IMG/VR virus record: IMGVR_UViG_3300043570_001980
Coordinates: 124,001 to 188,000 of that record
Reading direction: 5' to 3' (one strand)
DNA length: 64,000 bases
A program made the translations under genes and the position numbers. Below the pieces are notes generated by a model. That model ran no database searches and was not told where the DNA came from. It saw only the letters and a program-made list of their open reading frames with translations. Below are positions 12,317 through 43,208 of the stretch, piece after piece (position 1 is the stretch's first letter; each line of letters begins with the position of its first letter).

Positions 12317-12317
12317 A

Positions 12318-20129: not shown

Positions 20130-20155
20130 ACAGTATAGTTAAACAAGGAGCCTAA

Positions 20156-24688: not shown

Positions 24689-24927
24689 ATATCTTTAGGT
24701 TTTTCAAATCAATTGAAAGTCCTGAGCCTTTGGTGGATGGAATGTACGCTGATCAATACAGTAATCAGCAGATTCGAGACTATATTCTTTCTAGCTATCA
24801 AAAAAGATTTCCAATACCTGCAGAAACTCCAGAAACACATCCCTGGAAGTTTGATCCGCTTGATCCGCCGCAGGACTGGAGATTTGACCCTTACTACGAA
24901 CTTTGGATAAAAGAAAAAAATGAATAA
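24679..24927 (+). CDS. Hypothetical protein
   Basis: Fills the gap; Pro/Trp-rich C-terminus; start uncertain. Confidence 0.5.
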   Translation: MGINIFRFFKSIESPEPLVDGMYADQYSNQQIRDYILSSYQKRFPIPAETPETHPWKFDPLDPPQDWRFDPYYELWIKEKNE

Positions 24928-25881: not shown

Positions 25882-26850
25882 ATGAAAATATTAGTAACAG
25901 GTGGGTTGGGCCTTATTGGTCATAACGTCATCTCAAGATTACAAAATCTTGACCACACAACCTCAATCATTGATAACAAAACAACCTACGGAATTATTCC
26001 GCAGAGTGAGTTGGATTACTTGATGGAAGAGCGTATTAAAAAAATCCACCATCCTGGTTTTTATAATGCATCTATCGAGACTGCAGACACAGTTGATTAT
26101 GTGATGCAGGTGCAACAACCCGAAGTAGTTGTACACATGGCCAGTTTCCCCCGACAAAAAGTAGTCAATGCCAATCCAGCAAATGGCAGTCGTGTTATGA
26201 TGGAAGGCTTGATCAATCTGCTTGAGAGTGCCAAAAAGCATGGTGTTCGTCGATTTGTTTACATTAGTAGCTCAATGGTATATGGCGACTTTACTGATCA
26301 AGTCGAAGAAGATGCTGTGTGTAACCCACAGGGTCAGTATGGTATTATGAAGCTGGCAGGAGAGTGGTTGGTCAAAGACTATGCTCGACGAACTGGCATG
26401 GAATTTGTTATCATTCGTCCCAGTGCTGTGTACGGACCCTTGGATGTGGAAGATCGTGTGGTTGCTAAATTTATGCTTACTGCCATGCGTGGTGGGACGT
26501 TAAAAGTAAACGGTGCCAACGAAACACTAGACTTTACCTATGTTGACGATGCCGCCGATGGCATTGTCGCCGCGGCCACCATGCCCGGTGCTAAAAATCA
26601 CACATTCAACATTACTAAATCACACTCTGTGTCTTTATTGCAAGCGGCAGAAATGATTGTAAGTATAGTAGGCAGCGGCGAGATCGAGTGTAGAGATAGA
26701 GATGCAGACTTTCCCAGTCGCGGTGCGTTAAATATTAATCAGGCTCGTGCCATGTTAGGTTACGATCCCAAAGTTGATGTTCATGAAGGATTTCAAAATT
26801 ACTACAGCTGGCTTAACAATTCCCTTTACTGGGCTCCGAAAACAGTATAA
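25882..26850 (+). CDS. NAD-dependent nucleotide-sugar epimerase/dehydratase (extended SDR)
   Basis: TGGLGLIG, SSSMVYG, YGIMK (YxxxK), DFTYVDD. Confidence 0.92.
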   Translation: MKILVTGGLGLIGHNVISRLQNLDHTTSIIDNKTTYGIIPQSELDYLMEERIKKIHHPGFYNASIETADTVDYVMQVQQPEVVVHMASFPRQKVVNANPANGSRVMMEGLINLLESAKKHGVRRFVYISSSMVYGDFTDQVEEDAVCNPQGQYGIMKLAGEWLVKDYARRTGMEFVIIRPSAVYGPLDVEDRVVAKFMLTAMRGGTLKVNGANETLDFTYVDDAADGIVAAATMPGAKNHTFNITKSHSVSLLQAAEMIVSIVGSGEIECRDRDADFPSRGALNINQARAMLGYDPKVDVHEGFQNYYSWLNNSLYWAPKTV

Positions 26851-27880
26851 CAACATCAAAGAAGAAATTCTAGATGCCACAGATCGTGTATTGCGATCTG
26901 GTAATCTCATGAATGGAATCTATACCAAAGAATTTGAAACATGGTTAGCCAAGAAAAACAATAGCAAATATGCTATAACATGTCATAGCGGAACACAGGC
27001 ATTAGAAATAATCGCCCAATACTACATAACAAGAGACTGGGATAGCCGTTGCCATGTGTTAGTTCCAGCAATTACATATCCAGCTACCATCAATGCATTT
27101 TTGCGCTCAGGATGGGACGTTACTATTGTTGATACAGATGCATATGGGATAATGGATCGAGATCATGCCATGCCTGAATTAGTTAATTACAATGCTATTG
27201 TGTTAGTTGGACTGTACGGTGCACCTATACGCAACGGTTGGGAACTTATGGCAAATATCATAATTGAGGATGCCGCACAACATTGGCTAAGTGACCGTGG
27301 TCGACGAAAAGGTCATGCGGCAGCTATTAGTTTTGATCCAATGAAAAATCTAAGTTGTTACGGCAATGGTGGTGCAGTAATCACGGACGACCCAAAGTTA
27401 CACGAATATGCGCTGGGGTGGAGAGACAATGGAAAACCTGGACATACCATGACTGGCAGCAATAGTCGTATGAGTGAAGTTGATTGTGCAACAATGATGG
27501 TTAAAACAAAATACATTGATCAATGGCAACAGCGTAGAAGTAAAATTGCAGGATATTGGATTGAACATTTTTCAAAACAAAACATTAGAACATTAACTGA
27601 CAAATCAAATTATGTCGATCATTGTAATCACAAGTTTGTTGTTGACATAGACAGTCGAAACGAAGTTAAAAAAGAACTAATGCTTAGAAAAATTGAAACA
27701 AAAGTACACTACGAACTTCCGTTACACGAAATTCCATTATATGAATCAATTGTCGGCCCTGGAATGTTTTCTAAAGCCAGTGCATTGGCCAGACGAGTAT
27801 TGAGTTTACCCATATACCCTGAGCTGACAGACTTAGAAGTGGAATACATTGCAGATCAACTGATTGATATAGTTAAATGA
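26774..27880 (+). CDS. DegT/DnrJ/EryC1/StrS PLP-dependent sugar aminotransferase
   Basis: SGTQAL, EDAAQ, SFDPMKNL, GNGG, LSLPIYP; start uncertain. Confidence 0.92.
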   Translation: MMFMKDFKITTAGLTIPFTGLRKQYNNIKEEILDATDRVLRSGNLMNGIYTKEFETWLAKKNNSKYAITCHSGTQALEIIAQYYITRDWDSRCHVLVPAITYPATINAFLRSGWDVTIVDTDAYGIMDRDHAMPELVNYNAIVLVGLYGAPIRNGWELMANIIIEDAAQHWLSDRGRRKGHAAAISFDPMKNLSCYGNGGAVITDDPKLHEYALGWRDNGKPGHTMTGSNSRMSEVDCATMMVKTKYIDQWQQRRSKIAGYWIEHFSKQNIRTLTDKSNYVDHCNHKFVVDIDSRNEVKKELMLRKIETKVHYELPLHEIPLYESIVGPGMFSKASALARRVLSLPIYPELTDLEVEYIADQLIDIVK

Positions 27881-29259
27881 CAAGATTAGGTTACACACAC
27901 AGCAAAGTCGAAGGCCCGACAAATGCAGACATTTTGCACCTAGACCCTGTGTCTCAACAGGTGTGTAAGTTACTGTCAGATGATCCATTTATTACTCAAA
28001 GAGAAATTGCAAAACAGCTATCAATCTCTGCCAACGAACTACTAGTAATATCTAGTAAGATCAGAGAAGATCAACCAGCTCAGAATTACATATTGTATCA
28101 TGGTGGCGGCACAAAATATTGGACCAATACAATCACTCCATTGCTGACAAACGGATCATTACATGCGGCCATTGATCACAGTTACATGTACCCAAATCGT
28201 ATCGGACTGTACACTGGTATGAGCTGTATGTTCTACTGCAACTTTTGCGGACGAAATCCTGTGGCCAAATACGAAAAGAAATTTGAGCAATATGGATTTG
28301 ATGTTTTCAAACAGATTATTGATCAAGACATTAAAACTGATGCATTCTGGGATGACCGATTTCGTATCAGTGGGGGCCTAGAGCCGCTGACCAACAAGTA
28401 TCTAGGCAACATTATTACCTACGGTGCCGAACGTGGATATAAAATGCAATTATACACCAACGGCTATATGATGACTCGGAAATACATAGAACAACATCCA
28501 GGAATGAAAGACCTTCATGCTGTTCGTTTTAGTTTGTATGGTGTTGATGAACAAAGTGCATTTAAAGTAACTCGTCATTCTGAGAGTTATCATCGTATTG
28601 TTGAAAATATCATTGAGTATATCAATTCAACACACAATGTTCGTGTGGGAGTTAATTGGATCATACTGCCTGGCCACTCAAAGGATGTTGTTAAGTTATT
28701 AAACATCATTGACTATATTAATTCACGGACCGTGCGTCCTGTGGATTTTGTAACATTGAGAGAAGACTTTAGTCAAAATGTGCGCATCATCAGCGACGAA
28801 GAAAGAGTGCATCTTGTTGATATTTTTAATTTGATTAAAGATTTTAAAACAAATAAATGGCCGGCCACACATTGGGATTTTGGATATGCACTAGAACCGC
28901 TGGTGCATGGAAAAAATTCTGGACCATTGTCAATGATTTCCTGGAAAGAAATGGTGCCAACTAGCTTTCCTCAAGTGGCTGTAGCAGTTGACGTCAAGGG
29001 AGATGTATATGTCTATCACGAAAGTGGATTCTTAGATCGACCAGGTGCTGAAAGATATATAATTGGAAACACAGTTAACAGTAGCATAGAAACCGTAGTG
29101 CAAGAATTTGTTAACTCTAAAAAAACAATAAGACCGTCGCCACCTGATGTTGGATATTTAGATGCATTCGACCATGTGGTAAGTAGATTAATCAATCAAG
29201 CTCGAGACGATGAAAAATTTGGAATCTCGTGGAACCAAGGACCAGTAAAATGTCGATAA
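27877..29259 (+). CDS. desII: DesII-like radical SAM dTDP-4-amino-4,6-dideoxyglucose ammonia-lyase
   Basis: KYWTNTITPL, GLYTGMSCMFYCNFCGR, SGGLEPLTN, LYTNG, LREDFS, FDHVV match the DesII pattern as recalled. Confidence 0.82.
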   Translation: MTRLGYTHSKVEGPTNADILHLDPVSQQVCKLLSDDPFITQREIAKQLSISANELLVISSKIREDQPAQNYILYHGGGTKYWTNTITPLLTNGSLHAAIDHSYMYPNRIGLYTGMSCMFYCNFCGRNPVAKYEKKFEQYGFDVFKQIIDQDIKTDAFWDDRFRISGGLEPLTNKYLGNIITYGAERGYKMQLYTNGYMMTRKYIEQHPGMKDLHAVRFSLYGVDEQSAFKVTRHSESYHRIVENIIEYINSTHNVRVGVNWIILPGHSKDVVKLLNIIDYINSRTVRPVDFVTLREDFSQNVRIISDEERVHLVDIFNLIKDFKTNKWPATHWDFGYALEPLVHGKNSGPLSMISWKEMVPTSFPQVAVAVDVKGDVYVYHESGFLDRPGAERYIIGNTVNSSIETVVQEFVNSKKTIRPSPPDVGYLDAFDHVVSRLINQARDDEKFGISWNQGPVKCR

Positions 29260-30347
29260 CAATACCATACGCAAATTTATATAGCGAATACCTAGAAGTA
29301 AAAATTCCAGTTGACCAAGCCATTGAACGTTGTATTACAAACAGTTCATTCATTGGCGGGGAAGAAGTTTTAAAATTTGAAACTGCCTGGAAAGACTACA
29401 CGCAGTCAGAAGATTGTGCCGGAGTAAGCAGTGGCACAAGTGCATTGATGTTGTCTTTGTGGGCCGTGGGAGTTCGTCCCAGCGACGAAGTGCTTGTTCC
29501 AAGTATGAGCTTTGTTGCGTCAGCTGAGTGCGCTAGTCAACTAAATGCTCGTCCTCGTTTTATTGACATTGATCAATACTATACTATGGACCTTGATCAA
29601 ATTGAGTCAAAACTTACAAATAAAACCAAAGCAATTATTGTGGTGGATCTTTATGGTCAAACTGTGGATATAAAGAAGCTCAAGGAGATTGCCAACGGCA
29701 TCCCAATCATACAAGATGCGGCTCAAAGTTCTGGATGCAGGTACCTTGGAAATTCAATTGGCAGCCAGGCAGATTTAACATGTTTTAGTTTTTACCCAGG
29801 AAAAAATTTAAGTGCCATGGGAGATGCAGGTGCAGTTACAGGTCGTCAGGAATTAGTTAAACTTGTTAAAATGCTTAGAGATCACGGAAGAAAAGAAAAA
29901 TACGTACACGAGACTATTGGCTGGAATGAAAGACTAGATTCTATGCAGGCAGCGATTTTATCAGCCAAACTAGATCATTTAGATACCTGGAATCAACGAC
30001 GTATAGAAAATGCATCTGTTTATTACAATATGTTATCTAACTGTGACAAAATACAATTGCCAAAAGTAAACAGTAATGTGAGTACCCACGTTTATAATCA
30101 ATTTGTTATTGCAACAGATTGTAGAAATGAATTAAAAGAATTTCTTTCAAGTCGTGGAATTGAAACTGGTATACAATTTCCACTGGCATTACATAAACAA
30201 CCGGTGTATGCTAGAATGGCAGGTACGGATAGTTTTCCAAATAGTGAACGGCTAGCAGACTCGTGTTTGAGTTTGCCAGTACATGCACAAATTACCACTG
30301 CACAGGCAGAAACTGTGGCCAAAGCTGTAATAGATTTTTTTAACTAA
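29250..30347 (+). CDS. DegT/DnrJ/EryC1/StrS aminotransferase (DesV/FdtB-like)
   Basis: DAAQSSG, FSFYPGKNLSAMGDAG, GWNERLDSMQAAIL. Confidence 0.93.
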   Translation: MSITIPYANLYSEYLEVKIPVDQAIERCITNSSFIGGEEVLKFETAWKDYTQSEDCAGVSSGTSALMLSLWAVGVRPSDEVLVPSMSFVASAECASQLNARPRFIDIDQYYTMDLDQIESKLTNKTKAIIVVDLYGQTVDIKKLKEIANGIPIIQDAAQSSGCRYLGNSIGSQADLTCFSFYPGKNLSAMGDAGAVTGRQELVKLVKMLRDHGRKEKYVHETIGWNERLDSMQAAILSAKLDHLDTWNQRRIENASVYYNMLSNCDKIQLPKVNSNVSTHVYNQFVIATDCRNELKEFLSSRGIETGIQFPLALHKQPVYARMAGTDSFPNSERLADSCLSLPVHAQITTAQAETVAKAVIDFFN

Positions 30348-31971
30348 CGTTGCCGTAACGTTCTGAGAAATAATTTCTTAACCATTGCCAGTTAAAACTA
30401 TTTTTTCTGTATTCATAGTTGTCTTTATATGCTAGATAAAATTCTCGGCCGTCTTTGGCTCCTATCAATGCCCACTCAGCATAGTCGCCGTCAGCAACTG
30501 TTTCCCAAATATTAATTCTATAATCAGTTTCAATTGTTGGAGTTCGAGACTGTATATCATATAATTTACTGACTTCTCTAAATGCAGTTCTCCAGGTGTG
30601 GTATGGACTTGTGTTAAAATTACCATAGGTGCTGATAATTGGCACAACTTCGTGTGGGAAACTCATTGTATAATCTAGTCCAAATTCCTGGCCAATGTTA
30701 TCTAGTATAAGATTACAATTGTACATGATAACAGCCATTTCTCCGTAGACTAATTTGTTTACACGATTCTCGCTGTAAAAGATATAGTGTTTAGGCTGTT
30801 GAAAATAGTCAGGCTGGAATGTAAAATCAAAATCTGGGTGTAACTCTGTCTTGCCAAATACTGCAAAGTACCAGGGTGTTTGACTAGCCTTAGCAGCCTC
30901 GGCCAGAGCATTCTCCATTCCAACCACACCATGCACACGTTTAGCTCGAGGAAATTTTGTTAACAATTTTTCATAGTTTACATCTGCCTCGGGCTCATCG
31001 TAGCTAATAAACACAATATCTTGCAATGCAAGATCATGACTAATCTGAGTTTTATCAATGTACGGATAGTCGTAGACTTGTGTGTTAATTGTAGACAATG
31101 CTGTTCGTGGAATTAATGCACAATCGTTATTTGGGGACAATGTAATAACTGTCTTAGTTAGTTCTCTCCATAGATTAACAGTTGGGTACACCATTGGAGG
31201 ATTTTGAACAGTAAACAATCCTACCGGACCATAAAAAGAGTCAGGATCTAATGCAGTAACTTGTGTGTCGCAGGAATGTTGTATTACTGGTACTGGCCTG
31301 CGTTTAACTTGCAAGTCAACAAAGTTTAAATCATACCACTCGAGTAATTCTTTACCCTTAATTCTTTCAATAAACGTTGGCACATGCATTAAAAATGTAT
31401 CACCAAACTTTTGTTCATTGCTAGGAAATACATGTAACAACTCTTTTTGCCAAGGATCAGGATGCCATGTAAAATCAAAATTAGTATAATCACAGATTGT
31501 AGAGCAAATCCAAATGTATTCAAGATTGTCATTGCTAGCTGTTTTAGCAATGCGTGTTAGAGTGTCAAGATAATTGTCAAAATATCTAACCACTTTTTTA
31601 ATTGTGATTTTTTCCGACAGAGTATTCAATGCTAATTCTAGAGAATTATCCATATGATCTATTAAGTATATATCGCTAGATTGTCTAGTGAGAACAACCA
31701 TGTCTGTATGGTAATTGGTATCCGTGAATCCAGTTTTTGGTACTAGATAAGTACCCGAATCTTTTTGCCACTGACTAGGAAATACATGCTGTTGATTTGC
31801 TTGCCAGGGTGCTGGTTCCCAAAGAAAATTAAACTCAGAATAGCTCGATAAGTAATTTACGACCCAACAATATCGAGTGCGACTTAGTTCGCAGGCCTGC
31901 TCCGTGCTTGTTACTGCACGTTCATGCACAAACAATCCTGGTTTTTTTCCTATATAGAATATATCAAACAT
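30340..31971 (-). CDS. Multi-domain glycosyltransferase-like protein (paralog of 50067)
   Basis: C-terminal DIVFISYDEP...AKRVHGV...WRTAFRE; two internal F-x-W-x-P-x-PWQ...HVFPS repeats. Confidence 0.6.
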   Translation of the reverse strand: MFDIFYIGKKPGLFVHERAVTSTEQACELSRTRYCWVVNYLSSYSEFNFLWEPAPWQANQQHVFPSQWQKDSGTYLVPKTGFTDTNYHTDMVVLTRQSSDIYLIDHMDNSLELALNTLSEKITIKKVVRYFDNYLDTLTRIAKTASNDNLEYIWICSTICDYTNFDFTWHPDPWQKELLHVFPSNEQKFGDTFLMHVPTFIERIKGKELLEWYDLNFVDLQVKRRPVPVIQHSCDTQVTALDPDSFYGPVGLFTVQNPPMVYPTVNLWRELTKTVITLSPNNDCALIPRTALSTINTQVYDYPYIDKTQISHDLALQDIVFISYDEPEADVNYEKLLTKFPRAKRVHGVVGMENALAEAAKASQTPWYFAVFGKTELHPDFDFTFQPDYFQQPKHYIFYSENRVNKLVYGEMAVIMYNCNLILDNIGQEFGLDYTMSFPHEVVPIISTYGNFNTSPYHTWRTAFREVSKLYDIQSRTPTIETDYRINIWETVADGDYAEWALIGAKDGREFYLAYKDNYEYRKNSFNWQWLRNYFSERYGNVS

Positions 31972-33085
31972 GATTAGAATCGACGAAATTTATGGTAATA
32001 CTTTTTGGCCATTTATAAAAAATCAAGTGTCAAATACAAAATTGTACTGTTGTGATCCTCCAGGCAATACCAACCCTGACAGTTTGATTCACTTTGGCGG
32101 TAATAGCATAGATATGATTAATTATATATTCTTTCACGACCAAGAGCCAATTCATTTGGACATATACGCTGATTTATTTGCTGAGGTTTATGATAGAAAT
32201 CCATTGGATAACATTAGTTATGTTGATGCACAGAGGCGCCACGGAATAGTAACCAGTGAGTCTAACAGTGAATCAGTGGAGGAGCTGTGTAAAAAATACA
32301 ATTGGGAATTTTATTATTATTTTTTTCATGGATGGGCCGCGCTGGATTGGTATCGTGGGTACGACAAAACATTCCTGATTTCTCCTGCTAGCAAGCGCAA
32401 GATCACCAAAACATTTATTGCTCCAAATCGTATTATTGCCGGAGAACGTAAACACCGACTTGAAATGTTATATCATATATTTAAAAACCGTATGCTAGAC
32501 AATCATATCAGTTGTCCCGATACTTGTCCTGTAGAAAATATCAGTATACATGAAGCTATCAAACCCCTGGCAGAACGTTATCCTGACATTGAGTCGGTGT
32601 TTTCTCGCACACCTTTACCTATACAATTTGCTGGCGAGACTGATCATCCAATGCATTCGTGTTGGCTAAGCTTATTTGACGAAGCTGCCGAGAGTTTATT
32701 ATATTTGGTTACAGAAACTGTGTACACAGGACGCAGACATCATTTGACTGAAAAAACATTCAAACCCATAGCTCTGAGAATGCCGTTTGTGATTGTGGGT
32801 ACCAAAGGCAGCTTAAAGTACTTACGAAGTTATGGGTTTCGCACATTTGAAGGAATATGGGACGAAAGTTACGACGATTCAGAAGATGAAGATAGGATTA
32901 AGCACATTGCCAACCTATTGCGCAACCTTAACGAATTACCGCTGTCGGGCAAACAGGATCTATTTAATATGGCACAGGAAGTTATAGAGCACAATTGGAA
33001 TCACTTTTATAATGGCGGGTTTGAAGCTGTACTTTGGGCAGAGCTACAAGGAATGTTAGCAAAAATAAAAAAAGACTTTTATTAA
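31970..33085 (+). CDS. Glycosyltransferase-like protein, ET..TEK family
   Basis: LVTET...LTEKTFKPI...PFVIVG...GFRTF...DESYD. Confidence 0.6.
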   Translation: MIRIDEIYGNTFWPFIKNQVSNTKLYCCDPPGNTNPDSLIHFGGNSIDMINYIFFHDQEPIHLDIYADLFAEVYDRNPLDNISYVDAQRRHGIVTSESNSESVEELCKKYNWEFYYYFFHGWAALDWYRGYDKTFLISPASKRKITKTFIAPNRIIAGERKHRLEMLYHIFKNRMLDNHISCPDTCPVENISIHEAIKPLAERYPDIESVFSRTPLPIQFAGETDHPMHSCWLSLFDEAAESLLYLVTETVYTGRRHHLTEKTFKPIALRMPFVIVGTKGSLKYLRSYGFRTFEGIWDESYDDSEDEDRIKHIANLLRNLNELPLSGKQDLFNMAQEVIEHNWNHFYNGGFEAVLWAELQGMLAKIKKDFY

Positions 33086-34245
33086 TGATAAACTTTTGTT
33101 ACGATGAATTGTCTACTCCAAATATTGGATATCCAAATCTAGCAACTCTTAAAGCAGTTCCTTACACACCCAGTTGGAGAAAATTTGATAGCCAATGGCC
33201 TTATACTGTGCCATTGCGTCTTTTATATTATTTTCATTGCTATAAAATTCCTTACAACGTACATCTAGTGTCTAGTGCTCCACAGGGGTCAGTATACCCA
33301 ATATCAATAGGATGGTTTGATTTTCAATGCGATTATTTTTCTTTAATTCCTGTTAATACATTAAAAAAGATAAAAGACAAAGAAATACATGTTTTATTTT
33401 ATTATCACGAAGGCGATAACCCAACTAGAATAACACAAAGACTAGACAACTTGTGTCATCGACATAATATTGATATAAAATGTTACACATTTATAAGTGC
33501 TAATTCAGCGGCTGAAAATTACTTTTCAGACCATGAGTTTTTCTTTCGCTACATCAATAGAGATCAGGTGGCCGTTCCTATAACCACAGAAAAACGTCAG
33601 TATACATTTACTGCACTATGTAGGACTCACAAGTGGTGGAGGGCCACCTGCTTGGCAGACTTAGAACGCAAAGGATTATTAGAAAACAGTTTATGGAGTT
33701 ACAATACAAAATGCGTCATCGATGATAACTTTGATGATAACCCAATTCAAATTGATCACATAGAAATAAGAAATGAACTAGATTTTTTTATTAACAATGG
33801 TCCATATAGTTGTGACGATCAATCAGAAAAAGAACACAATGATCATCACATTGTCAATGCAAGTTTATACACACAATCCTACATACATATTATACTAGAA
33901 ACACATTTTGATGCTGATCAGAGTGGTGGCACATTTTTAACAGAAAAAACATGGAAGGCAATTAAATTTGGTCAGCCTTTTATAATTGTTGGTCCACCAA
34001 ATAGTCTAGCAACTCTTAGAGAACGTGGTTATAAAACCTTTGATCATTGTATTAACAACAAGTATGATAGTATACAGGATAATACTAATCGATGGATGGC
34101 AATTGTTGATACACTAACACAACTCAATTCTAATCCAGAATTGATTTATCAACAATGCATAGAAGATGTCAGACACAACCAGAGATTGTTTTTGTCCACA
34201 GGACATGAAGAGTTAAATAGAATAATAGGAAAATTAAATGTCTAA
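33085..34245 (+). CDS. Glycosyltransferase-like protein, ET..TEK family
   Basis: IILET...FLTEKTWKAI...PFIIVG...GYKTF. Confidence 0.6.
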   Translation: MINFCYDELSTPNIGYPNLATLKAVPYTPSWRKFDSQWPYTVPLRLLYYFHCYKIPYNVHLVSSAPQGSVYPISIGWFDFQCDYFSLIPVNTLKKIKDKEIHVLFYYHEGDNPTRITQRLDNLCHRHNIDIKCYTFISANSAAENYFSDHEFFFRYINRDQVAVPITTEKRQYTFTALCRTHKWWRATCLADLERKGLLENSLWSYNTKCVIDDNFDDNPIQIDHIEIRNELDFFINNGPYSCDDQSEKEHNDHHIVNASLYTQSYIHIILETHFDADQSGGTFLTEKTWKAIKFGQPFIIVGPPNSLATLRERGYKTFDHCINNKYDSIQDNTNRWMAIVDTLTQLNSNPELIYQQCIEDVRHNQRLFLSTGHEELNRIIGKLNV

Positions 34246-35299
34246 TATTATTAATAGTTACACCAGTTGGCAACCACTTGAAGAAGTAATTGTTGGTTGT
34301 GTTTATACGCCAGAATATTTTAACTTTATCCAGGATGAACAAGTTAAAGGTCAAATGACTAAAATACTCGAAGAGTCGGCTGAAGATTTGGATAATCTAC
34401 AAAAAGTAATTGAATCGTACGGAGCAGTAGTTAAGAGGCCAGATCTTCCAAAAATTAAACAATGGCAAAGTTTGCAAATAACAGATCAAGGTGTCCCAAT
34501 CCCACCACTAACACCTAGAGATTGGCAAATTACCCTGGGTGAAAAATTATTAAGAGTATTAAATGTTGCGGAAATGAATACTATATGTCGTGACTACGAA
34601 CAGAAACAACCAGGTAGCATAATTGATCCGCACAATAAAAATTCTGAATCACGCAATAACATATATGACCCTGACCACGTTATGGTAGACGCAGTGGCCA
34701 GTTGTATTGTTCGTGTGGGCACAGATGTATTCTTTGACAACAGCGAGTGGCTAACTGACGGTCAGATGGAATGGATTCGAAATAATGTACTAGATAGTCG
34801 ATATCGAATTCGTAGAGCTGTCACAAATGGGCACGGGGATAGTGTGTTTGCTATATTAAAACCGGGGGTAATATTAAGTACCATGCACGATGGTGATATC
34901 AACTACAAAGAAAATTTTCCCGGATGGGAAGTGTGTAAGATTTGGGACGCAAGTATTTTTGCTGCCATGGAGGTTGGAAAATTTCGTCAAGAAAACTTTA
35001 ATGGACGCTGGTATGTACAAGGTCAGAATCCAACTACTGAGTTTGCTAAGTTTGTTGACACTTATCTGACCAAATGGACTGGGTATGTTAAAGAAACTGT
35101 GTTTGATGTTAACTGTTTGGTGTTAGACGAGCAACATGTTATCTTTAGTTCTTACAACAAGATGGTTTTTGATTTTTGCAAAAAACATAACATTGAACCA
35201 ATAATTTCAGAGTTACGACACAAGTATTTCTTTGACGGGGGCATCAGTTGTTGCACTCAGGATATTCGTCGTCGAGGCGGATTAGAAACTTATCTATAA
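34238..35299 (+). CDS. Amidinotransferase family protein (StrB1/glycine amidinotransferase-like)
   Basis: NSYTSWQPLEEVIVG, PRD, HGD, FDVN, GGISCCTQDIRR. Confidence 0.82.
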   Translation: MSNIINSYTSWQPLEEVIVGCVYTPEYFNFIQDEQVKGQMTKILEESAEDLDNLQKVIESYGAVVKRPDLPKIKQWQSLQITDQGVPIPPLTPRDWQITLGEKLLRVLNVAEMNTICRDYEQKQPGSIIDPHNKNSESRNNIYDPDHVMVDAVASCIVRVGTDVFFDNSEWLTDGQMEWIRNNVLDSRYRIRRAVTNGHGDSVFAILKPGVILSTMHDGDINYKENFPGWEVCKIWDASIFAAMEVGKFRQENFNGRWYVQGQNPTTEFAKFVDTYLTKWTGYVKETVFDVNCLVLDEQHVIFSSYNKMVFDFCKKHNIEPIISELRHKYFFDGGISCCTQDIRRRGGLETYL

Positions 35300-37786: not shown

Positions 37787-39260
37787 ATGTTTCATTTAGC
37801 AAGTACCTTTGTATTTTTCCATTGGTATTTTTGGGTAATTCCTTGGTTACACGAATGTACCTAGGGCACTTAAAATAATCCAATTTGTGTTTTATCAACG
37901 ATTTTAATTGGTGATCAAAATTTTCTGGGATTTCTACATCGGGTGCTAGTACAATGTATGCAACGATTTCTGTTAACCCATCACTGTTCTCAATACCCGA
38001 CACACCAGCTTCAAATACCAATTCGTGCGATATTAATAAATTTTCTATTTCTACTGGGCTGACCCAGTTGGCATTCACTTTTAGCATATCTTTAGAACGC
38101 CCAACAAACTGATATGTATCACCTTGTTGTATAAATTTGTCTCCTGTTTTACACCATTTACCTATAAAAGTTTCCTGGGACTTTTTGGTTTCATTTTGAT
38201 ATCTAAGAGCCATCGACGGACCATCAATATACAATTCTCCCACTTGATTTTGTACAACACAATCATTGGCATCTTTTACCATTCCTGAAAATCCTGGTAA
38301 TAATTTTCCTGACACAATAACCGGTGCTAGTAATTCGGTACTACCGTACCCGTCAACGATAGGTAATTTTGTTAACTCCTGCCATCGTTGTTGCATGGTA
38401 GATGTTATTGCCTCACCAGCACTTACGCACAATCTTAAAGACCCATAGTTAATTGGTAAATTTTCATTTAACAATCCAACATAAAAAGACGGAACTGATC
38501 CAAATAACGTGGGTTTGTGTTTTTTAAATATCCTTGCCGCAGTACTAGGAGTATGTAATTTACCATGCAATATTGTTGTGGCTCCCACAGTCAATGGAGA
38601 TATAAATGCACTACTTATTCCCCAACTAAAAAACAATTTTGATGTGGCAAAAACAATATCGTCGGACTTATAACCTACATCGATCCCGTAGCCTAACCCT
38701 ACACCAATCATTGATCTATGAGAATGTACAACTGATTTAGATTCTCCTGTACTGCCCGAGGTAAACAACCAAAATGCTTCGCCGTCTCTTAGAGTTGTTG
38801 GGGGATCAAAACTTGATGGAGTACTCAATATATTTAGTTGTTCAATAGATAACACATGCTTGGGCTTGTGTGTAGTTTCAGCAAGGTAACTGTCAATGGA
38901 TTGATTTTGTGTTGTTCTATTATTTGCAAAAATAATAACTTTTGCGGCGCTGGATTCAATAAAGTGACAAATAGTTTTTTTAGGCGACCACGGATTTCCG
39001 ATAACCGGAACAAATCCTCCTAATATACAGCCTAGTATTGCAATGCCGCATTCGATAGTGTCCGGCATTAATATTAACACACGATCTTCTCTTGTTAACC
39101 CCATGTCTGTGAGACTTTTAGCAAATCCCCGAGATCTATGCTCAAGCATTTCATAACTAATCGAGCTGGTATCATCAATTAATGCAATCTTATTTCCTAA
39201 TTTTTTTCCAAAAATGTGTTTGGCAAAATTAAATTTAACAGGTATATCTGTTAACTGCAT
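37770..39260 (-). CDS. Benzoate/aryl-CoA ligase family adenylating enzyme
   Basis: FWLFTSGSTGESKSVVH, SKLFFSWG, SAGE, DGYGSTE, TGDK, LPKNTNGKIQR. Confidence 0.88.
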   Translation of the reverse strand: MQLTDIPVKFNFAKHIFGKKLGNKIALIDDTSSISYEMLEHRSRGFAKSLTDMGLTREDRVLILMPDTIECGIAILGCILGGFVPVIGNPWSPKKTICHFIESSAAKVIIFANNRTTQNQSIDSYLAETTHKPKHVLSIEQLNILSTPSSFDPPTTLRDGEAFWLFTSGSTGESKSVVHSHRSMIGVGLGYGIDVGYKSDDIVFATSKLFFSWGISSAFISPLTVGATTILHGKLHTPSTAARIFKKHKPTLFGSVPSFYVGLLNENLPINYGSLRLCVSAGEAITSTMQQRWQELTKLPIVDGYGSTELLAPVIVSGKLLPGFSGMVKDANDCVVQNQVGELYIDGPSMALRYQNETKKSQETFIGKWCKTGDKFIQQGDTYQFVGRSKDMLKVNANWVSPVEIENLLISHELVFEAGVSGIENSDGLTEIVAYIVLAPDVEIPENFDHQLKSLIKHKLDYFKCPRYIRVTKELPKNTNGKIQRYLLNETYEQSK

Positions 39261-40747
39261 ACAGTTACTCCATATAATTTTTCAAATCTATCAGCATCGA
39301 CTCTATCATTAACCATGGGCTCTCCACGTATGTTTAAGCTGGTGTTTAACAGCATTGGGCAACCAGTCATCACGTACCACTTTGCCAACAATTGTCTAAT
39401 TCCCGATCCATCATTCGGAACTGTCTGAACACGACTAGTGCCATCAACGTGAACGATAGCAGGAAATATGTGAGGATGCCTGCAACGAGCGATGACTTGC
39501 ATATACCTACTGTCACTGAAGCCACGAGGCATATCAAAATACATATCAACATGCTCCTCCAGAATGACTGGCGCAAATGGTCTGAATTTTTGTCTGCGTT
39601 TGATTTCATTTACACGATCCTTTATTTCTGATCCTCTTGGGTCGGCCAATAAACTGCGGTTGCCCAGTGCTCTAGGACCAAACTCTGCTCTACCGCTAGC
39701 CACTCCAACAATTTGATTTTTAAGTAGCTCATCAAGTATACTGTTAACTGGATACGGTCCAGGAATGTCATGCCCAAGAAAAGCACTAGTCCAATTAACT
39801 CTGTGACCGTATGCCAAAGCGGCAGCGCCAAGACTGCTGCCTGCGTCGCCAGGATTAGGCATAATCCAAATATTATTAAAATAGTTTCCAAGATGTCTAT
39901 TTGCAAGGCAATTTAATGCCACGCCTCCCATGTATACAAGATTATCGCTCCAATTTAAAGACTTGGCACGTTTCATTACATTGACAATTAATTCTTCTAC
40001 TAGCTGTTGTGCTGATGCGGCAATGTCTTCATTGGTGGCAGCTTCTAAGTAAGTTGCATCTAATCCAGTGTGAAGATTATCTTTAAACTTGATAGTATCA
40101 AGATCTTCAATAAGACCCTGATTCATTTTTTCATACCACGAGGATTTCCCCCATCCCGACATGCCCATGGTAATGTATTCTTCGTCCATTGGGTGTAGTC
40201 CAATACGTTTAGTTATTGCACTATAAAACAACCCTATACTATGAGGATACCGTTGGCTCCACAACTTTTTATAAGTTGCTCGATGTGTAGAATCGTACAT
40301 TGCTCCCCAGATACTAATAGTATCCCATTCACCTATTGCGTCTATAACGACAACGGTGGCCTTGGTAAAGGGACTGGTTTGGAATCCTGCGGCAGCATGG
40401 GACAAATGATGTCCAGCATGTAAAAATAATGGCTCTTTATGAAAAGATACAGGTACATGTTTATGCAAATACTTACGAACAGTAATATCGGTAAAATCCA
40501 ACGCTTCATTATATTGTCCTGCGTAAAAGTTTCTTAGCTTTTTAAGCCAAGGTTTTTCGTAAAAAGCAACAACGTCTGGCTCGCCATACGATAATGCCTC
40601 TGCTACCAAGTCTTGATTGATATGAGGATCATGCTTGCTTTTACTGTAGCGTTCGGCGTGGCCGGCAAATAAAATATCGCCTTGATTAGCAATTACCGAT
40701 ACGGCAGCGTCATGAAAACCAGCACTTATACCTAGGTATTTTTTCAT
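39251..40747 (-). CDS. O-carbamoyltransferase (NodU/CmcH/TobZ family)
   Basis: HDAA, HHLSHA, GGVALN, EFGPRALGNRS, RPFAP, LNTSLN. Confidence 0.95.
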   Translation of the reverse strand: MKKYLGISAGFHDAAVSVIANQGDILFAGHAERYSKSKHDPHINQDLVAEALSYGEPDVVAFYEKPWLKKLRNFYAGQYNEALDFTDITVRKYLHKHVPVSFHKEPLFLHAGHHLSHAAAGFQTSPFTKATVVVIDAIGEWDTISIWGAMYDSTHRATYKKLWSQRYPHSIGLFYSAITKRIGLHPMDEEYITMGMSGWGKSSWYEKMNQGLIEDLDTIKFKDNLHTGLDATYLEAATNEDIAASAQQLVEELIVNVMKRAKSLNWSDNLVYMGGVALNCLANRHLGNYFNNIWIMPNPGDAGSSLGAAALAYGHRVNWTSAFLGHDIPGPYPVNSILDELLKNQIVGVASGRAEFGPRALGNRSLLADPRGSEIKDRVNEIKRRQKFRPFAPVILEEHVDMYFDMPRGFSDSRYMQVIARCRHPHIFPAIVHVDGTSRVQTVPNDGSGIRQLLAKWYVMTGCPMLLNTSLNIRGEPMVNDRVDADRFEKLYGVTVCS

Positions 40748-40846: not shown

Positions 40847-41935
40847 TTAGTTCTTTCGATTGATTATGTTTATCTGACGGTCTATAAAGTCTGAGTCTGA
40901 CCAATGATAGTCGTATATAGCACAACTACTGCTGGTACTCACGCTGTATACATCTAGACTATTATTTAATTGATTCCAAACGGTCAGGTAATCTTCTGTG
41001 TTAAAACTACGTTTTAAATCTACTTGTCCCACTTGAGGATGCCCAATGGTTAATAGTTTATCATTAGGGTCAAACCCATTGACTATTAACCATTCTTTAA
41101 ATTCAGCTAGTTTAATTTGTTGCCAGCTGTGATTACCTGGATTATTTGCCCACTCAATATCAAAATCTCCAGCGGCTTCAGTCTGACTGCGCATAGAGGT
41201 AGTGACTAATTCACTAACTCGACTGTCACGGCCTTCGTCCATGAATACTTCCCAATGATGTTTTCCAATTGCCTTGTTAACTCCAACAAACACTCCTCCA
41301 AGACTGCGGTTTATTGTTTCAATACCAAATAAATCATAGTCATTTTCGTCAAGAGTAAATCTTGGCGCATTTAACCAACACATTAGTTGGCTGGGTCGTT
41401 GCCACTCAGGTGCTTCTATTTCTTTACGATAACTCAATGCCCATGTTTCAAACTCATGACAGAGTAAATTTAATTGTCTTATATGCCAGCGTATGTCAGC
41501 ACTGGCGTGATTAAAATAAACCGACATGCTACCGCTTACGCCCTGAAGGTCTTCAAAATAACGATGCAACCAATTCAAGCGTTCATGAATCATATTCCTA
41601 CCAACTGTTCTTGATCCTACAGGATCATCAGTGATAGTGTTTTCCATTGTAAAATAATCATCAATGGTATATCCAATATTTGCTTGATTAATTGCATTTA
41701 TTGATTTGTTTACCTGTTCAAGAATGTACCACCCATTGCGCTGACTTTGAGTAAATCCTAAAAAACAAAAATTTTTTTCTAAATGAGAGTCATTTGTTAA
41801 CAAACCGTTTAATGCATTTAACCATTTACGAGATAATGAACTATCATAGACGTCAATATAAACTGAGTGAAGATTATCTGTATTTCTATTTTTAAGTTCA
41901 ATTTTAATCTGTTCTAATATTTTTCCACCAGCCAT
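40847..41935 (-). CDS. Hypothetical protein
   Basis: 362-aa ORF in a tightly coupled operon. Confidence 0.75.
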   Translation of the reverse strand: MAGGKILEQIKIELKNRNTDNLHSVYIDVYDSSLSRKWLNALNGLLTNDSHLEKNFCFLGFTQSQRNGWYILEQVNKSINAINQANIGYTIDDYFTMENTITDDPVGSRTVGRNMIHERLNWLHRYFEDLQGVSGSMSVYFNHASADIRWHIRQLNLLCHEFETWALSYRKEIEAPEWQRPSQLMCWLNAPRFTLDENDYDLFGIETINRSLGGVFVGVNKAIGKHHWEVFMDEGRDSRVSELVTTSMRSQTEAAGDFDIEWANNPGNHSWQQIKLAEFKEWLIVNGFDPNDKLLTIGHPQVGQVDLKRSFNTEDYLTVWNQLNNSLDVYSVSTSSSCAIYDYHWSDSDFIDRQINIINRKN

Positions 41936-43208
41936 ATATTTTGTTATCCTGTTGTAGTATTTGGTCTAGCCCAAATGTATCATTTCTAATAGATTCCAAT
42001 TGTAACATTCTGAACTTTCCTCTTGCAAGACCTTTTTCCCAGGTGTCGGGCCATTGTTCTGCAAAAGTTGGGCGTGATTTTAGTTGTAGTAACACATCCT
42101 TCAACGCACCTGGAGGTAAGTTAGTTACTAGACGATCTACTGTGCTGTCTAATAACTCACGAGGCAATGCCAATGGACTCATAATGATGTCCGGGCTAAA
42201 ACTAAAAATCACCTTGGCTAATATATCAACCCCAAGCTCATTTGATAACTGCTGTATATTACCAACTTCAAATAGTCCAGGTAATGTGAGAGTAAAATCA
42301 ATTCGCATTTGCCTGCGATGTTTTTGTATCTCAATTCCCTGTTTAAAGTTTTTTAGAAAGGTGGAATATTCAAGCCCTGTGCGGATGTATTCTCCTGTGG
42401 CTCCTGTTCCGTCGAGGCTGGCACAGATTTGCCAATCGCGAACATTAGATAAAATATCACGATATAGATTAATACCCCGAAAATCAACGCGACTAAGATT
42501 GGTGTTATACCTGGCATATAATTGTCCTCCATCATTTAATTCAATAATACGTTTCATATACCGCCAATGTTGTTCATACATTAGAGGTTCACCGCCTACC
42601 CAATAGACTTCTTCAACTCTGTGTTCTTCTACTGCTTCTGCAAATTCTTTTTCAATTTGCGTGTCCTGGAATTTACTAATTTCTGTTCTTACTGCTGGTT
42701 TCATCCAGTTATTTCTTGGATCCGAATAGTCAATAAGATTGTGTTGACGTTCTTCGCTTTCCCAACTACTAGACAACATATCCCCACACATGCGACATTT
42801 GAAATTGCAAAGATTGCTAAATCTATAATCCCAACTTATTGGTTTCATAGTTGTAGATCCGTTAGGCTGTGTTTTTTCCATGGCCTCTTCATAACGATGT
42901 TTGAATAGGTGCCAGAAATATGTTCGATAGACATCAGTATTTAACAGTTTACTGTTACAAACATCACATTCGGGCAAAATTTCTCCTGCCATCATACGTT
43001 GTCTAACACTTTTCATATGATCGCTATTCCAGTGTTGATCTAGTGTGAGTGGAATATATTTTCCTGTGCCTGCTGATGTGTCAATGTACTGTTGAAAATT
43101 TTGTGCAGGTTCGCGGCTAGCACAACACATTCTGCGTTCGGTTTGAGGACTTAGATAGGTATGCACCCAGGGTGCCATACACAAAGATTCAGGTTTATTC
43201 ATAAGCAA
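41904..43208 (-). CDS. Radical SAM protein with an N-terminal twitch/SPASM-like domain
   Basis: CMAPW..CC..CDVC; CNFKCRMC; GGEP. Confidence 0.9.
   Translation of the reverse strand: MLMNKPESLCMAPWVHTYLSPQTERRMCCASREPAQNFQQYIDTSAGTGKYIPLTLDQHWNSDHMKSVRQRMMAGEILPECDVCNSKLLNTDVYRTYFWHLFKHRYEEAMEKTQPNGSTTMKPISWDYRFSNLCNFKCRMCGDMLSSSWESEERQHNLIDYSDPRNNWMKPAVRTEISKFQDTQIEKEFAEAVEEHRVEEVYWVGGEPLMYEQHWRYMKRIIELNDGGQLYARYNTNLSRVDFRGINLYRDILSNVRDWQICASLDGTGATGEYIRTGLEYSTFLKNFKQGIEIQKHRRQMRIDFTLTLPGLFEVGNIQQLSNELGVDILAKVIFSFSPDIIMSPLALPRELLDSTVDRLVTNLPPGALKDVLLQLKSRPTFAEQWPDTWEKGLARGKFRMLQLESIRNDTFGLDQILQQDNKIYGWWKNIRTD

What the first reader, a model, noticed from the sequence alone, without database searches (positions are those of the whole stretch)
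25882..30347. Phage-encoded desosamine-like pathway: SDR, aminotransferase, DesII, aminotransferase
Seen: four overlapping genes, with a DesII-like radical SAM enzyme flanked by two DegT-family enzymes. Established: in Streptomyces venezuelae DesI (4-aminotransferase), DesII (radical deaminase) and DesV (3-aminotransferase) make TDP-3-amino-3,4,6-trideoxyglucose, which DesVI dimethylates for macrolides. No N-methyltransferase is visible here. Inference: the phage makes a rare 4,6-dideoxy-3-amino sugar, with the amine possibly acylated or amidinated by neighbouring enzymes, for virion, DNA or cell-surface glycosylation.
Basis: partly seen in the sequence, partly recalled or inferred. Interest (0 to 1): 0.8.

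Follow-up and report, generated by a model that had tools for sequence, protein, structure and literature searches.

The report
Jumbo-phage DesII-like amino-sugar operon
A roughly 342-kb uncultured phage carries a tightly packed operon for remodelling an activated sugar with a radical enzyme related to DesII of antibiotic-sugar synthesis, next to likely sugar-transferring enzymes; no sequenced isolate phage has this enzyme, but the exact sugar and its target are not known.

Summary
Four same-strand, overlapping genes at 25882-30347 encode an extended SDR, a DegT aminotransferase, a DesII-family radical SAM enzyme and a second DegT. The context is a jumbo phage (100% match to a 341,990-bp IMG/VR contig).

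- **Radical SAM enzyme:** its only solved relatives are DesII (E 2.4e-68). It keeps the cluster cysteines, the SAM motifs and the E408/D456 equivalents. However, it scores 340 bits against a 450-bit equivalog cut-off and lies outside the actinomycete DesII clade (AU p 0.0004).
- **Downstream DegT:** DesV-like (258 bits).
- **Upstream DegT:** not a DesI orthologue (DesV 133 bits, DesI 45 bits).
- **SDR:** lacks the acid dyad of 4,6-dehydratases and looks epimerase-like, so "4,6-dideoxy" is unproven.

Across related phage contigs the conserved core is SDR + DesII-like + DesV-like DegT. The upstream DegT is accessory. Neighbours that recur across these contigs are a tandem GT-A-fold protein, possible further glycosyltransferases, an amidinotransferase homologue and a carbamoyltransferase.

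Best reading: a phage pathway to a 3-amino, probably 4-deoxy, NDP-sugar that may be N-amidinated or carbamoylated and is transferred to an unknown acceptor. It is a new variant of a known kind.

The parts
25882..26850 (+). Extended SDR, epimerase-type (GxxGxxG, YISSSMVYGD, YGIMK). Not a canonical 4,6-dehydratase.
   Evidence: PF01370 E 1.5e-44. TIGR01181 scores 117 bits against a cut-off of 365. Best PDB hits are GalE 4zrm (103 bits), UXS and GlcA 4-epimerases; DesIV 1r66 scores only 55 bits. The motif is invariant in the phage orthologues.
26777..27880 (+). DegT aminotransferase 1 (the ORF opens at TTG 26774). Divergent, from the C-3-aminotransferase lineage. Accessory within the phage lineage.
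   Evidence: PF01041 196 bits. PDB scores: 7b0d 148, QdtB 135, DesV 133, against ArnB 53, DesI 45 and PseC 44 bits. The PLP lysine (ISFDPMKN) and DAAQ motif are kept in all orthologues. Tree; absent or replaced in L066, L068, L079 and L081.
27877..29259 (+). DesII-family radical SAM enzyme (C117/C121/C124, GGLE 166-169, R217/S219/Y221, D297, E382, D429).
   Evidence: TIGR04426 E 2.6e-101. The only PDB hits are DesII 8HZV and 8HZY, E 2.4e-68. Residues were mapped to DesII C141/145/148, G187-E190, R238/S240/Y242, D323, E408 and D456 from PMC11434129. They are conserved across 109 family members.
29250..30347 (+). DegT aminotransferase 2 (the ORF opens at GTG 29229). DesV-like, and part of the conserved core.
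   Evidence: PF01041 330 bits. PDB scores: 7b0d 267, DesV 2oga 258, QdtB 233 bits. It clusters with an Amycolatopsis DesV-like gene. It is present in every phage variant examined.
30340..31971 (-). Virus-only protein with three degenerate GT-A-like repeats: a probable glycosyltransferase. A homologue is always adjacent to the cassette.
   Evidence: No Pfam or PHROG hit. AF2 model has pLDDT 75 and pTM 0.44. Foldseek against the PDB gives 28 hits at E<=1e-3, all GT-A glycosyltransferases (LH3, K4CP, SunS, WrtF, RmlT), with low TM-scores of 0.14-0.23. Synteny.
31970..33085 (+). Member of a phage-only paralogue family (also 33034-34245, 46967-48118(-) and 121-1083). Candidate glycosyltransferase, not proven.
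   Evidence: The paralogues share the motif ET..TEKT[FW]KPI..G.PF. The nearest named Atlas cluster is Glyco_transf_10, at score 0.79 only. Structural relatives in other phages are fused to SDR, methyltransferase or UDP-glucose dehydrogenase domains. Foldseek PDB top hits are GT-B enzymes at E 0.03-0.3, which is not significant.
33034..34245 (+). Second paralogue of the same candidate glycosyltransferase family.
   Evidence: conserved in L001, L002, L066 and L073.
34238..35299 (+). Amidinotransferase homologue (AGAT/StrB1/SxtG type) that keeps the catalytic His (NGHGD) and Cys (GGISCCTQD).
   Evidence: PDB hits: AGAT E 1.1e-12, SxtG 6.4e-11, StrB1 1.7e-10, HsvA 6.6e-9. The motifs are kept in the orthologues. 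Present in window-type contigs, L001, L002 and L066 only.
39251..40747 (-). NodU/CmcH-type carbamoyltransferase. It accompanies the cassette in most related phage contigs.
   Evidence: PF02543 and PF16861; phrog_1601 E 1.2e-94; synteny.
40847..43208 (-). Conserved unknown protein (362 aa) and a radical SAM enzyme that accompany the cassette in most related phage contigs. Their link to the sugar pathway is not shown.

Best explanation
A jumbo phage operon that remodels a host-supplied nucleotide sugar.

Proposed steps:
1. The DesII-family radical SAM enzyme abstracts the hydrogen next to a C-OH and expels the neighbouring substituent. In the DesII precedent this is a C-4 ammonium group, here installed by the upstream DegT. 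The product is a 3-keto-4-deoxy sugar.
2. The DesV-like downstream DegT converts this to a 3-amino-3,4-dideoxy sugar. It would be 6-deoxy only if the host supplies a 4-keto-6-deoxy precursor.
3. The epimerase-type SDR prepares or adjusts the sugar's C-4 configuration or oxidation state. It does not act as a 4,6-dehydratase.
4. The amine may then be amidinated or carbamoylated by the neighbouring enzymes.
5. The adjacent GT-A-fold protein transfers the sugar to an acceptor that is not identified (virion protein, DNA or a host envelope carrier).

Shown: the gene identities, the conserved catalytic residues, the synteny and the phage context. Inferred: the order of steps, the regiochemistry, the nucleotide carrier, the tailoring reactions and the acceptor.
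For: - DesII is the only solved relative (E 2.4e-68). All SAM, cluster and catalytic residues are kept, including the D456 equivalent whose mutation inactivates DesII.
- DegT2 scores 258 bits to DesV.
- Both DegTs keep the PLP lysine.
- The genes overlap and the cassette is conserved over 47-100% protein identity in contigs of up to 345 kb.
- The neighbour that is always present has a GT-A fold.
- An amidinotransferase homologue with its catalytic Cys and His lies nearby, as does a carbamoyltransferase.
- Cellular relatives of the DesII-like gene sit in glycan loci with glycosyltransferases.
Against: - DegT1 is not DesI-like and is dispensable in related phages. A DesI-type amination before the radical step therefore rests on gene order alone.
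- The SDR lacks dehydratase residues, and no nucleotidyltransferase or 4,6-dehydratase was found in the window.
- The DesII-like protein is below the equivalog cut-off and outside the actinomycete clade.
- DesII itself switches to dehydrogenation on a 4-OH substrate.
- No acceptor is identified.
- The glycosyltransferase assignments rest on modest-confidence models.
Confidence: 0.5

Rival explanations
1. A DesI-independent route. The conserved triad (SDR, DesII-like, DesV-like DegT) works without prior amination. The radical SAM enzyme acts on a hydroxy sugar in one of two ways. It could act as a C-3 dehydrogenase, as DesII does with TDP-quinovose. Or it could act as a dehydratase on an axial 4-OH made by the epimerase-type SDR. 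Either way it makes a 3-keto sugar that DegT2 aminates. DegT1, where present, adds a second amine or serves another sugar.
For: - Related phages have only SDR-DesII-DegT2 (L079) or SDR-DegT2type-DesII (L066, L081).
- The SDR is GalE-like.
- DesII dehydrogenates TDP-quinovose and partly dehydrates TDP-fucose, according to PMC11434129.
- DegT1 belongs to the C-3 lineage.
- Many cellular homologues have no adjacent DegT and pair instead with Gfo/Idh/MocA oxidoreductases.
Against: - In the window and several relatives a DegT sits directly upstream of the radical enzyme with a 4-nt overlap, as desI does upstream of desII in the actinomycete loci.
- No enzyme of this family is known whose native role is dehydrogenation or dehydration.
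- The host could supply a 4-amino sugar in the phages that have only the triad.
Confidence: 0.27
2. An aminocyclitol or aminoglycoside-like small-molecule pathway rather than glycan decoration. On this reading the DegT enzymes act on inosose-type ketones and a StrB1-like amidinotransferase makes guanidino groups. The carbamoyltransferase, halogenases, AMP-ligase and radical SAM enzymes then tailor a secreted or intracellular metabolite.
For: - The amidinotransferase matches StrB1 and SxtG.
- The carbamoyltransferase, two Trp-halogenase-family genes, an AMP-binding enzyme and five radical SAM/SPASM genes lie within 15 kb.
- A cyanophage paper reads a DegT, radical SAM and amidinotransferase set as antibiotic genes (PMC12801897).
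Against: - The radical SAM enzyme is specifically DesII-like, which is an NDP-sugar enzyme.
- DegT2 is closest to DesV, QdtB and WbpE.
- No inositol dehydrogenase, cyclase or kinase was found.
- GT-A-fold and other candidate transferases are conserved with the cassette.
- The halogenases and the ligase occur only in the window's closest relatives.
Confidence: 0.1
3. The PLP and radical SAM enzymes modify a nucleobase side chain directly (thymidine hypermodification), as in other large phages. The location next to thymidylate synthase would then be functional.
For: The cassette always lies just downstream of ThyX or DHFR+ThyA. I recall that PLP and radical SAM enzymes occur in known thymidine hypermodification pathways; this was not checked here.
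Against: - Full-length, high-scoring matches to the NDP-sugar enzymes DesII and DesV.
- An SDR of the nucleotide-sugar type.
- No hydroxymethyl-pyrimidine kinase or DNA-directed transferase was detected among the ORFs scanned.
- ThyX here scores as an ordinary FAD-dependent thymidylate synthase (TIGR02170, 158 bits).
Confidence: 0.05

Closest known systems
TDP-desosamine pathway of Streptomyces venezuelae (DesIV, DesI, DesII, DesV, DesVI)
   Same: A DesII-family radical SAM enzyme with the same cluster, SAM and acid/base residues. It is followed by a DesV-like C-3 aminotransferase and preceded by a DegT enzyme and an SDR, so the gene order follows the Des step order.
   Different: The phage enzyme lies outside the actinomycete clade and below the equivalog cut-off. 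The upstream DegT is not DesI-type. The SDR lacks dehydratase residues. There is no DesVI methyltransferase and no DesIII nucleotidyltransferase. An amidinotransferase and a carbamoyltransferase are present instead. The setting is a phage, not a macrolide cluster.
DesII-like genes in surface-glycan loci of uncultured marine and soil microbes (SAR11, Marine Group I thaumarchaeotes, Elusimicrobia, Cytophagaceae, Acidobacteriota)
   Same: The same wider family (322-409 bits to TIGR04426) with conserved catalytic residues and glycosyltransferases nearby. The thaumarchaeote clade is the nearest cellular group to the phage clade.
   Different: The cellular genes pair with or are fused to Gfo/Idh/MocA oxidoreductases and usually lack flanking DegT pairs. 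As far as I could find, none has been characterised.
Virus-encoded amino-sugar pathways and virion or DNA glycosylation (giant-virus viosamine and bacillosamine pathways; mycobacteriophage virion glycosylation; phage DNA glycosylation). Named from memory and from citations seen.
   Same: A virus encodes its own nucleotide-sugar tailoring enzymes (SDR, DegT) together with glycosyltransferases.
   Different: I found no report of a radical SAM sugar lyase in any of them. tblastn of the DesII-like protein against 50,697 phage records gave no hit.
Amidinotransferases AGAT, StrB1, SxtG and HsvA
   Same: The neighbour at 34238-35299 shares the C-terminal catalytic Cys motif and the His motif.
   Different: It is very divergent: there is no Pfam hit and only 51 bits to AGAT. 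Its substrate is unknown, and a link to the amino sugar is inferred from synteny only. A distant homologue in cyanophage S-SCSM2R sits beside KdsA and KdsB.

Membership tests
DesII (TIGR04426, dTDP-4-amino-4,6-dideoxy-D-glucose ammonia-lyase) | CX3CX2C cluster motif plus the GGE, ribose and beta-6 SAM-binding motifs | tested here: met
   C117/C121/C124, GGLE 166-169, R217/S219/Y221 and D297 align to DesII C141/145/148, G187-E190, R238/S240/Y242 and D323. They are 100% conserved in 109 sequences, except D297 at 105 of 109.
DesII (TIGR04426, dTDP-4-amino-4,6-dideoxy-D-glucose ammonia-lyase) | Active-site acids E408 and D456 (the D456A mutant is inactive) | tested here: met
   E382 and D429 align to them. 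They are kept in 103 of 109 and 108 of 109 family members.
DesII (TIGR04426, dTDP-4-amino-4,6-dideoxy-D-glucose ammonia-lyase) | Score above the curated equivalog cut-off (450 bits) | tested here: not met
   339.7 bits. Actinomycete DesII scores 720-728 bits. All phage, SAR11, thaumarchaeote, Elusimicrobia and Acidobacteriota relatives score 322-409 bits.
DesII (TIGR04426, dTDP-4-amino-4,6-dideoxy-D-glucose ammonia-lyase) | Placement inside the clade of characterised (actinomycete) DesII | tested here: not met
   The phage clade (99*) groups with the thaumarchaeote clade. Actinomycetes form a separate 100* clade. The AU test rejects a phage plus actinomycete clade, p 0.0004. The group was named after the tree had been seen.
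DesII (TIGR04426, dTDP-4-amino-4,6-dideoxy-D-glucose ammonia-lyase) | Partnered with a DesI-type 4-aminotransferase that makes its substrate | tested here: not met
   The upstream DegT scores 45 bits to DesI against 133 to DesV. It falls in the DesV-like clade, apart from the actinomycete DesI clade. It is absent or replaced in related phages.
DesII (TIGR04426, dTDP-4-amino-4,6-dideoxy-D-glucose ammonia-lyase) | Radical deamination of a TDP-4-amino-4,6-dideoxyhexose to the 3-keto sugar | not testable with these tools
   This needs anaerobic reconstitution and LC-MS.
DesV-type NDP-3-keto-sugar aminotransferase (DegT family) | Fold-type I DegT enzyme with the Schiff-base lysine, and closest to characterised C-3 aminotransferases | tested here: met
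   DegT2 scores 330 bits to PF01041. PDB scores: DesV 258, QdtB 233, WbpE 210 bits. FSFYPGKN and DAAQ are kept in 16 orthologues. The regiochemistry itself is untested.
NDP-hexose 4,6-dehydratase (DesIV/RmlB) | Ser/Thr-Tyr-Lys triad plus the Asp/Glu acid-base pair after the catalytic Thr (the TDE motif, quoted from memory) | tested here: not met
   The SDR has YISSSMVYGD and YGIMK with no acid pair, and this is invariant in phage orthologues. TIGR01181 scores 117 bits against a cut-off of 365. DesIV 1r66 scores 55 bits against 103 for GalE 4zrm.
Amidinotransferase (AGAT/StrB1) | Catalytic Cys near the C-terminus and catalytic His | tested here: met
   alignment: GGISCCTQDIRRRG against GGFHCWTCDVRRRG, and NGHGDSVF against NPHIDATF. 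Both are conserved in 5 orthologues. The third triad residue (Asp) was not mapped. There is no Pfam hit.
GT-A fold glycosyltransferase (for 30340-31971) | GT-A Rossmann-like fold with a DxD-type metal site | tested here: inconclusive
   28 Foldseek PDB hits at E<=1e-3, all GT-A enzymes, with probability 0.95-1.0. However, TM-scores are 0.14-0.23 and the model pTM is 0.44. A candidate D-F-D lies in the conserved C-terminal repeat. There is no sequence-level family hit.

The most novel reading that the evidence does not exclude
A lineage of jumbo phages uses a DesII-family radical SAM enzyme, so far characterised only in actinomycete antibiotic-sugar pathways, to build a 3-amino-4-deoxy sugar. 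The route may be a three-enzyme, DesI-independent one: epimerase-type SDR, radical dehydratase or dehydrogenase, then C-3 aminotransferase. The phage may then convert the amine to a guanidino or ureido group and attach the sugar to its virion or DNA. This would be a new sugar modification and the first radical SAM sugar-deoxygenation pathway known in a virus.
Probability: 0.2. Interest if true: 0.8.

Novelty: new variant of a known kind. Interest (0 to 1): 0.62.

Why it matters
- DesII chemistry has been studied as a curiosity of macrolide sugar biosynthesis. This analysis shows that the family is widespread in uncultured marine and soil microbes and in a lineage of 250-345-kb phages, where it forms the core of a conserved glycosylation-type module.
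- If the product decorates virions or DNA, it would be a new kind of phage surface or genome modification, with consequences for host recognition and for evasion of defence systems.
- The phage variants with and without the upstream aminotransferase form a natural experiment on whether DesII-type enzymes act as deaminases, dehydrogenases or dehydratases in vivo.
- The enzymes could also be a source of new amino-deoxy sugar biocatalysts.

Tried and rejected
- **DNA and protein searches of isolate phages.** blastn of the cassette and tblastn of the DesII-like protein against 50,697 isolate and GenBank phage records found nothing.
- **Family scans of the neighbours.** Pfam at E<=5 and PHROGs gave no usable family for 30340-31971, 31970-33085 or 33034-34245.
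- **The GT10 (fucosyltransferase) idea for the 31970-33085 family.** This came from a remembered motif and stayed a lead only: Atlas score 0.79, Foldseek PDB E 0.03-0.3 to GT-B enzymes, and BFVD fucosyltransferase hits at E about 0.1-0.3. The AF2 model is poor over residues 1-121.
- **The SDR as a 4,6-dehydratase or a UXS/ArnA-type decarboxylase.** Rejected on motif grounds.
- **DegT1 as a DesI orthologue.** Rejected.
- **Promoter and terminator scans.** Uninformative.
- **Literature.** A paper on large aquatic 'moraphages' could not be tied to this lineage. Searches found no report of a phage DesII.
- **Ralstonia phage RsoM2USA.** It has a homologue of the GT-A-like protein, but the region is annotated only as hypothetical proteins.
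- **Not done.** The remaining ~280 kb of the phage genome was not examined, so RmlA/RmlB-type genes elsewhere cannot be excluded.

Full report
**1. Observation.** Four + strand ORFs fill 25882-30347: 25882-26850, 26774-27880, 27877-29259 and 29229-30347. The likely true starts are ATG 26777 or 26783 and ATG 29250. That gives overlaps of about 68 nt, 4 nt (ATGA) and 10 nt, and the last gene overlaps a convergent gene by 8 nt. Pfam and NCBIfam identify an extended SDR (PF01370, E 1.5e-44), a DegT aminotransferase (196 bits), a radical SAM protein and a second DegT (330 bits). The radical SAM protein's best family by far is TIGR04426 rSAM_desII (E 2.6e-101, 339.7 bits, model positions 40-459 of 468).

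**2. Phage context.**
- The window holds a 2430-aa ORF that matches a virion structural PHROG and proteins of RaK2-, Atu_ph07- and phiKZ-like jumbo phages.
- It also holds a tail-fibre-like gene, 25 tRNAs and a tmRNA, ThyX and a MoxR/VWA pair.
- The DesII-like gene is 100% identical to genes on IMG/VR contigs of 98,550 and 341,990 bp, and 96% identical to genes on contigs of 262 and 345 kb.
- Contigs of 254 and 342 kb from other samples carry the same neighbourhood at 63-66% identity.
- This is an uncultured jumbo phage lineage. No isolate phage among 50,697 records has a detectable homologue of the radical SAM gene.

**3. The radical SAM enzyme.** Its only relatives with solved structures are DesII 8HZV and 8HZY (E 2.4e-68 over residues 74-449). 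I mapped the residues described in the DesII structure paper (PMC11434129).

| Feature | DesII | Window protein |
|---|---|---|
| Cluster cysteines | C141/C145/C148 | C117/C121/C124 |
| GGE motif | G187-E190 | GGLE 166-169 |
| Ribose motif | R238/S240/Y242 | R217/S219/Y221 |
| Beta-6 motif | D323 | D297 |
| Proposed general base | E408 | E382 |
| Essential acid (D456A inactive) | D456 | D429 |

In an alignment of 109 family members, the cysteines, the GGE motif positions checked (G, G and E) and the ribose R and S are invariant. The ribose Tyr is kept in 108 of 109, E382 in 103 of 109 and D429 in 108 of 109.

Membership of the strict DesII group fails on two counts:
- The score is below the 450-bit equivalog cut-off. 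Actinomycete genes found next to DesI-like genes score 720-728 bits. Every phage, SAR11, thaumarchaeote, Elusimicrobia and Acidobacteriota relative scores 322-409 bits.
- In a 67-row tree the phage clade (99*) groups with a Marine Group I thaumarchaeote clade. Actinomycetes form a separate clade with Acidobacteriota and others. An AU test rejects joining phages with actinomycetes (p 0.0004; the group was chosen after seeing the tree).

So it works like DesII as far as sequence can show, but it belongs to an uncharacterised sister lineage.

**4. The aminotransferases.**
- DegT2 is DesV-like. It scores 258 bits to DesV 2oga, 233 to QdtB and 210 to WbpE.
- DegT1 is more divergent. Its best matches are also C-3 aminotransferases (7b0d 148, QdtB 135, DesV 133 bits). 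The C-4 enzymes score far lower: ArnB 53, perosamine synthase 50, WecE 46, DesI 45 and PseC 44 bits.
- In a tree, both phage DegTs and an Amycolatopsis DesV-like gene form one clade (95*). The DegT genes lying immediately upstream of actinomycete DesII, which I presume to be DesI, form a separate clade (99*).
- Both DegTs keep the PLP lysine and the DAAQ motif in all orthologues, so both are probably active.
- DegT1 is therefore not a DesI orthologue. A DesI-like role rests on its position alone.

**5. The SDR.** It has GxxGxxG, YISSSMVYGD and YGIMK. The Asp/Glu pair that follows the catalytic Thr in 4,6-dehydratases (recalled from the literature) is absent, and the motif is invariant in phage orthologues. 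Best solved relatives are UDP-glucose 4-epimerases, UDP-GlcA 4-epimerases and UXS (86-103 bits). DesIV scores 55 bits. TIGR01181 scores 117 bits against a cut-off of 365. I found no nucleotidyltransferase or 4,6-dehydratase among the window ORFs scanned. The carrier nucleotide and the 6-deoxy state are therefore open, and the keto-sugar precursor probably comes from the host.

**6. Comparative architecture.** The cassette always lies downstream of a VWA/DUF2201 gene and a thymidylate synthase (ThyX, or DHFR plus ThyA).

| Loci | Gene order |
|---|---|
| Window-type, L001, L002, L068, L073/74, the P0071 contig | SDR-DegT-DesII-DegT |
| L068 (upstream DegT only 27% identical to the window's) | SDR-DegT-DesII-DegT |
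| L079 | SDR-DesII-DegT2 |
| L066, L080/81 | SDR-DegT2type-DesII, with no second DegT |
| The P0058 contig | A metallophosphoesterase in place of the SDR |

The DesII-like gene and a DesV-type DegT are present in every variant. The SDR accompanies them in all but the P0058 contig, and the upstream DegT is labile. This weakens the strict DesI-DesII-DesV reading. It also raises a rival: the radical enzyme may act on a hydroxy sugar as a dehydrogenase. DesII does this with TDP-quinovose, and it partly dehydrates the C-4 epimer TDP-fucose. The epimerase-type SDR could set the C-4 configuration.

**7. Neighbours.**
- *30340-31971 (-).* A homologue of this virus-only protein always abuts the cassette. 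It has three degenerate repeats. Its AF2 model (pLDDT 75, pTM 0.44) matches only GT-A glycosyltransferases at E<=1e-3, including LH3, K4CP, SunS, WrtF, ppGalNAc-T and the TDP-rhamnose transferase RmlT. TM-scores are low, so I call it a probable tandem GT-A transferase.
- *31970-33085 and 33034-34245.* With 46967-48118 and 121-1083 they form a phage-only paralogue family. In other phages the relatives are fused to SDR, methyltransferase or UDP-glucose dehydrogenase domains. Fold matches to GT-B and fucosyltransferases are not significant.
- *34238-35299.* An amidinotransferase homologue (AGAT E 1.1e-12, SxtG, StrB1, HsvA) with the catalytic Cys and His conserved. It is present in a subset of the lineage.
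- *Other recurring neighbours.* A carbamoyltransferase, a conserved 362-aa unknown and several radical SAM/SPASM genes accompany the cassette in most related phage contigs.
- *Window-type only.* The two halogenase-family genes and the AMP-binding enzyme occur only in the window's closest relatives.

**8. Cellular relatives.** DesII-like genes occur in SAR11 single-cell genomes, a Marine Group I thaumarchaeote, Elusimicrobia, Cytophagaceae, Gloeocapsa, Omnitrophota and Acidobacteriota. Where I looked they lie among glycosyltransferases. They are fused to a Gfo/Idh/MocA oxidoreductase in L005 and adjacent to one in L046. This points to surface-glycan roles for the wider family.

**9. Conclusion.**
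- Best explanation (0.5): a phage nucleotide-sugar pathway yielding a 3-amino, probably 4-deoxy sugar through DesII-type radical chemistry. The sugar may be amidinated or carbamoylated, and it is transferred by adjacent transferases to an unknown acceptor.
- Main rival (0.27): the same module working without a DesI step.
- Minor rivals: an aminocyclitol-like metabolite pathway (0.1) and direct nucleobase hypermodification (0.05).
- I found no prior report of a phage DesII-like enzyme. A cyanophage paper notes an amidinotransferase, a DegT-family gene and a radical SAM gene as 'antibiotic genes'. In that genome the amidinotransferase lies by KdsA and KdsB, and no DesII homologue is detectable.
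- Novelty: a new variant of a known kind.

Noticed in passing
window 1694-8737 and 11944-12365: An array of 25 tRNA genes covering nearly all amino acids, plus a tmRNA gene (tag ANDSQFALAA). This is typical of very large phages.
   Followed up: no
window 35301-39260 (-): Two tandem tryptophan-halogenase-family genes (308-310 bits) and an AMP-binding enzyme. They occur only in the window's closest relatives: both halogenases in L069/L072, one in L070/L071, and none in L001, L002 or more distant relatives. Their substrate is unknown.
   Followed up: partly
window 41904-49508 (-): A run of five radical SAM genes, two of them with an N-terminal SPASM domain, interleaved with a paralogue of the candidate glycosyltransferase family. 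Homologues of several of them occur in most related phage contigs. Their function is unknown.
   Followed up: partly
window 24920-25870 (+): A TauE/SafE-like membrane protein sits between ThyX and the SDR in this phage only. The 96%-identical relatives carry a radical-SAM-like ORF in that slot, so the insertion point is variable.
   Followed up: partly
window 6361-7140, 12441-12995, 14400-15476, 18363-21448: A D-Ala-D-Ala carboxypeptidase (S11), a weak outer-membrane beta-barrel match, a TctC-type periplasmic receptor and a MoxR AAA ATPase with a DUF2201/VWA partner. They may carry clues to the host.
   Followed up: no
L004 759-3482, L005 6816-9428, L006 6777-9380: In Gloeocapsa, Cytophagaceae and Omnitrophota genomes the DesII-like domain lies in the C-terminal half of an ORF of about 870-900 aa. 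In L005 the N-terminal half is a Gfo/Idh/MocA oxidoreductase. I am not aware that such a fusion has been described.
   Followed up: partly
L007-L027, L033, L038, L050 (Pelagibacteraceae single-cell genomes): DesII-like genes (33-39% identity) are common in SAR11 genomes. In L007 the gene lies beside glycosyltransferases and an ABC transporter, which suggests a C-4-deoxygenated or C-3-modified sugar in SAR11 surface glycans.
   Followed up: partly
L080-L085 (IMG/VR contigs): Some phage DesII-like proteins are about 400 aa long and lack the roughly 75-residue N-terminal helical domain present in the window protein and in DesII.
   Followed up: no
L111 8677-9570 (Synechococcus phage S-SCSM2R): Apart from two marine single-cell virus contigs, this is the only phage record with a homologue of the amidinotransferase. 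The gene lies beside KdsA, KdsB, a glycosyltransferase and 2OG-Fe(II) oxygenases. That hints at a sugar-related role for phage amidinotransferases.
   Followed up: partly
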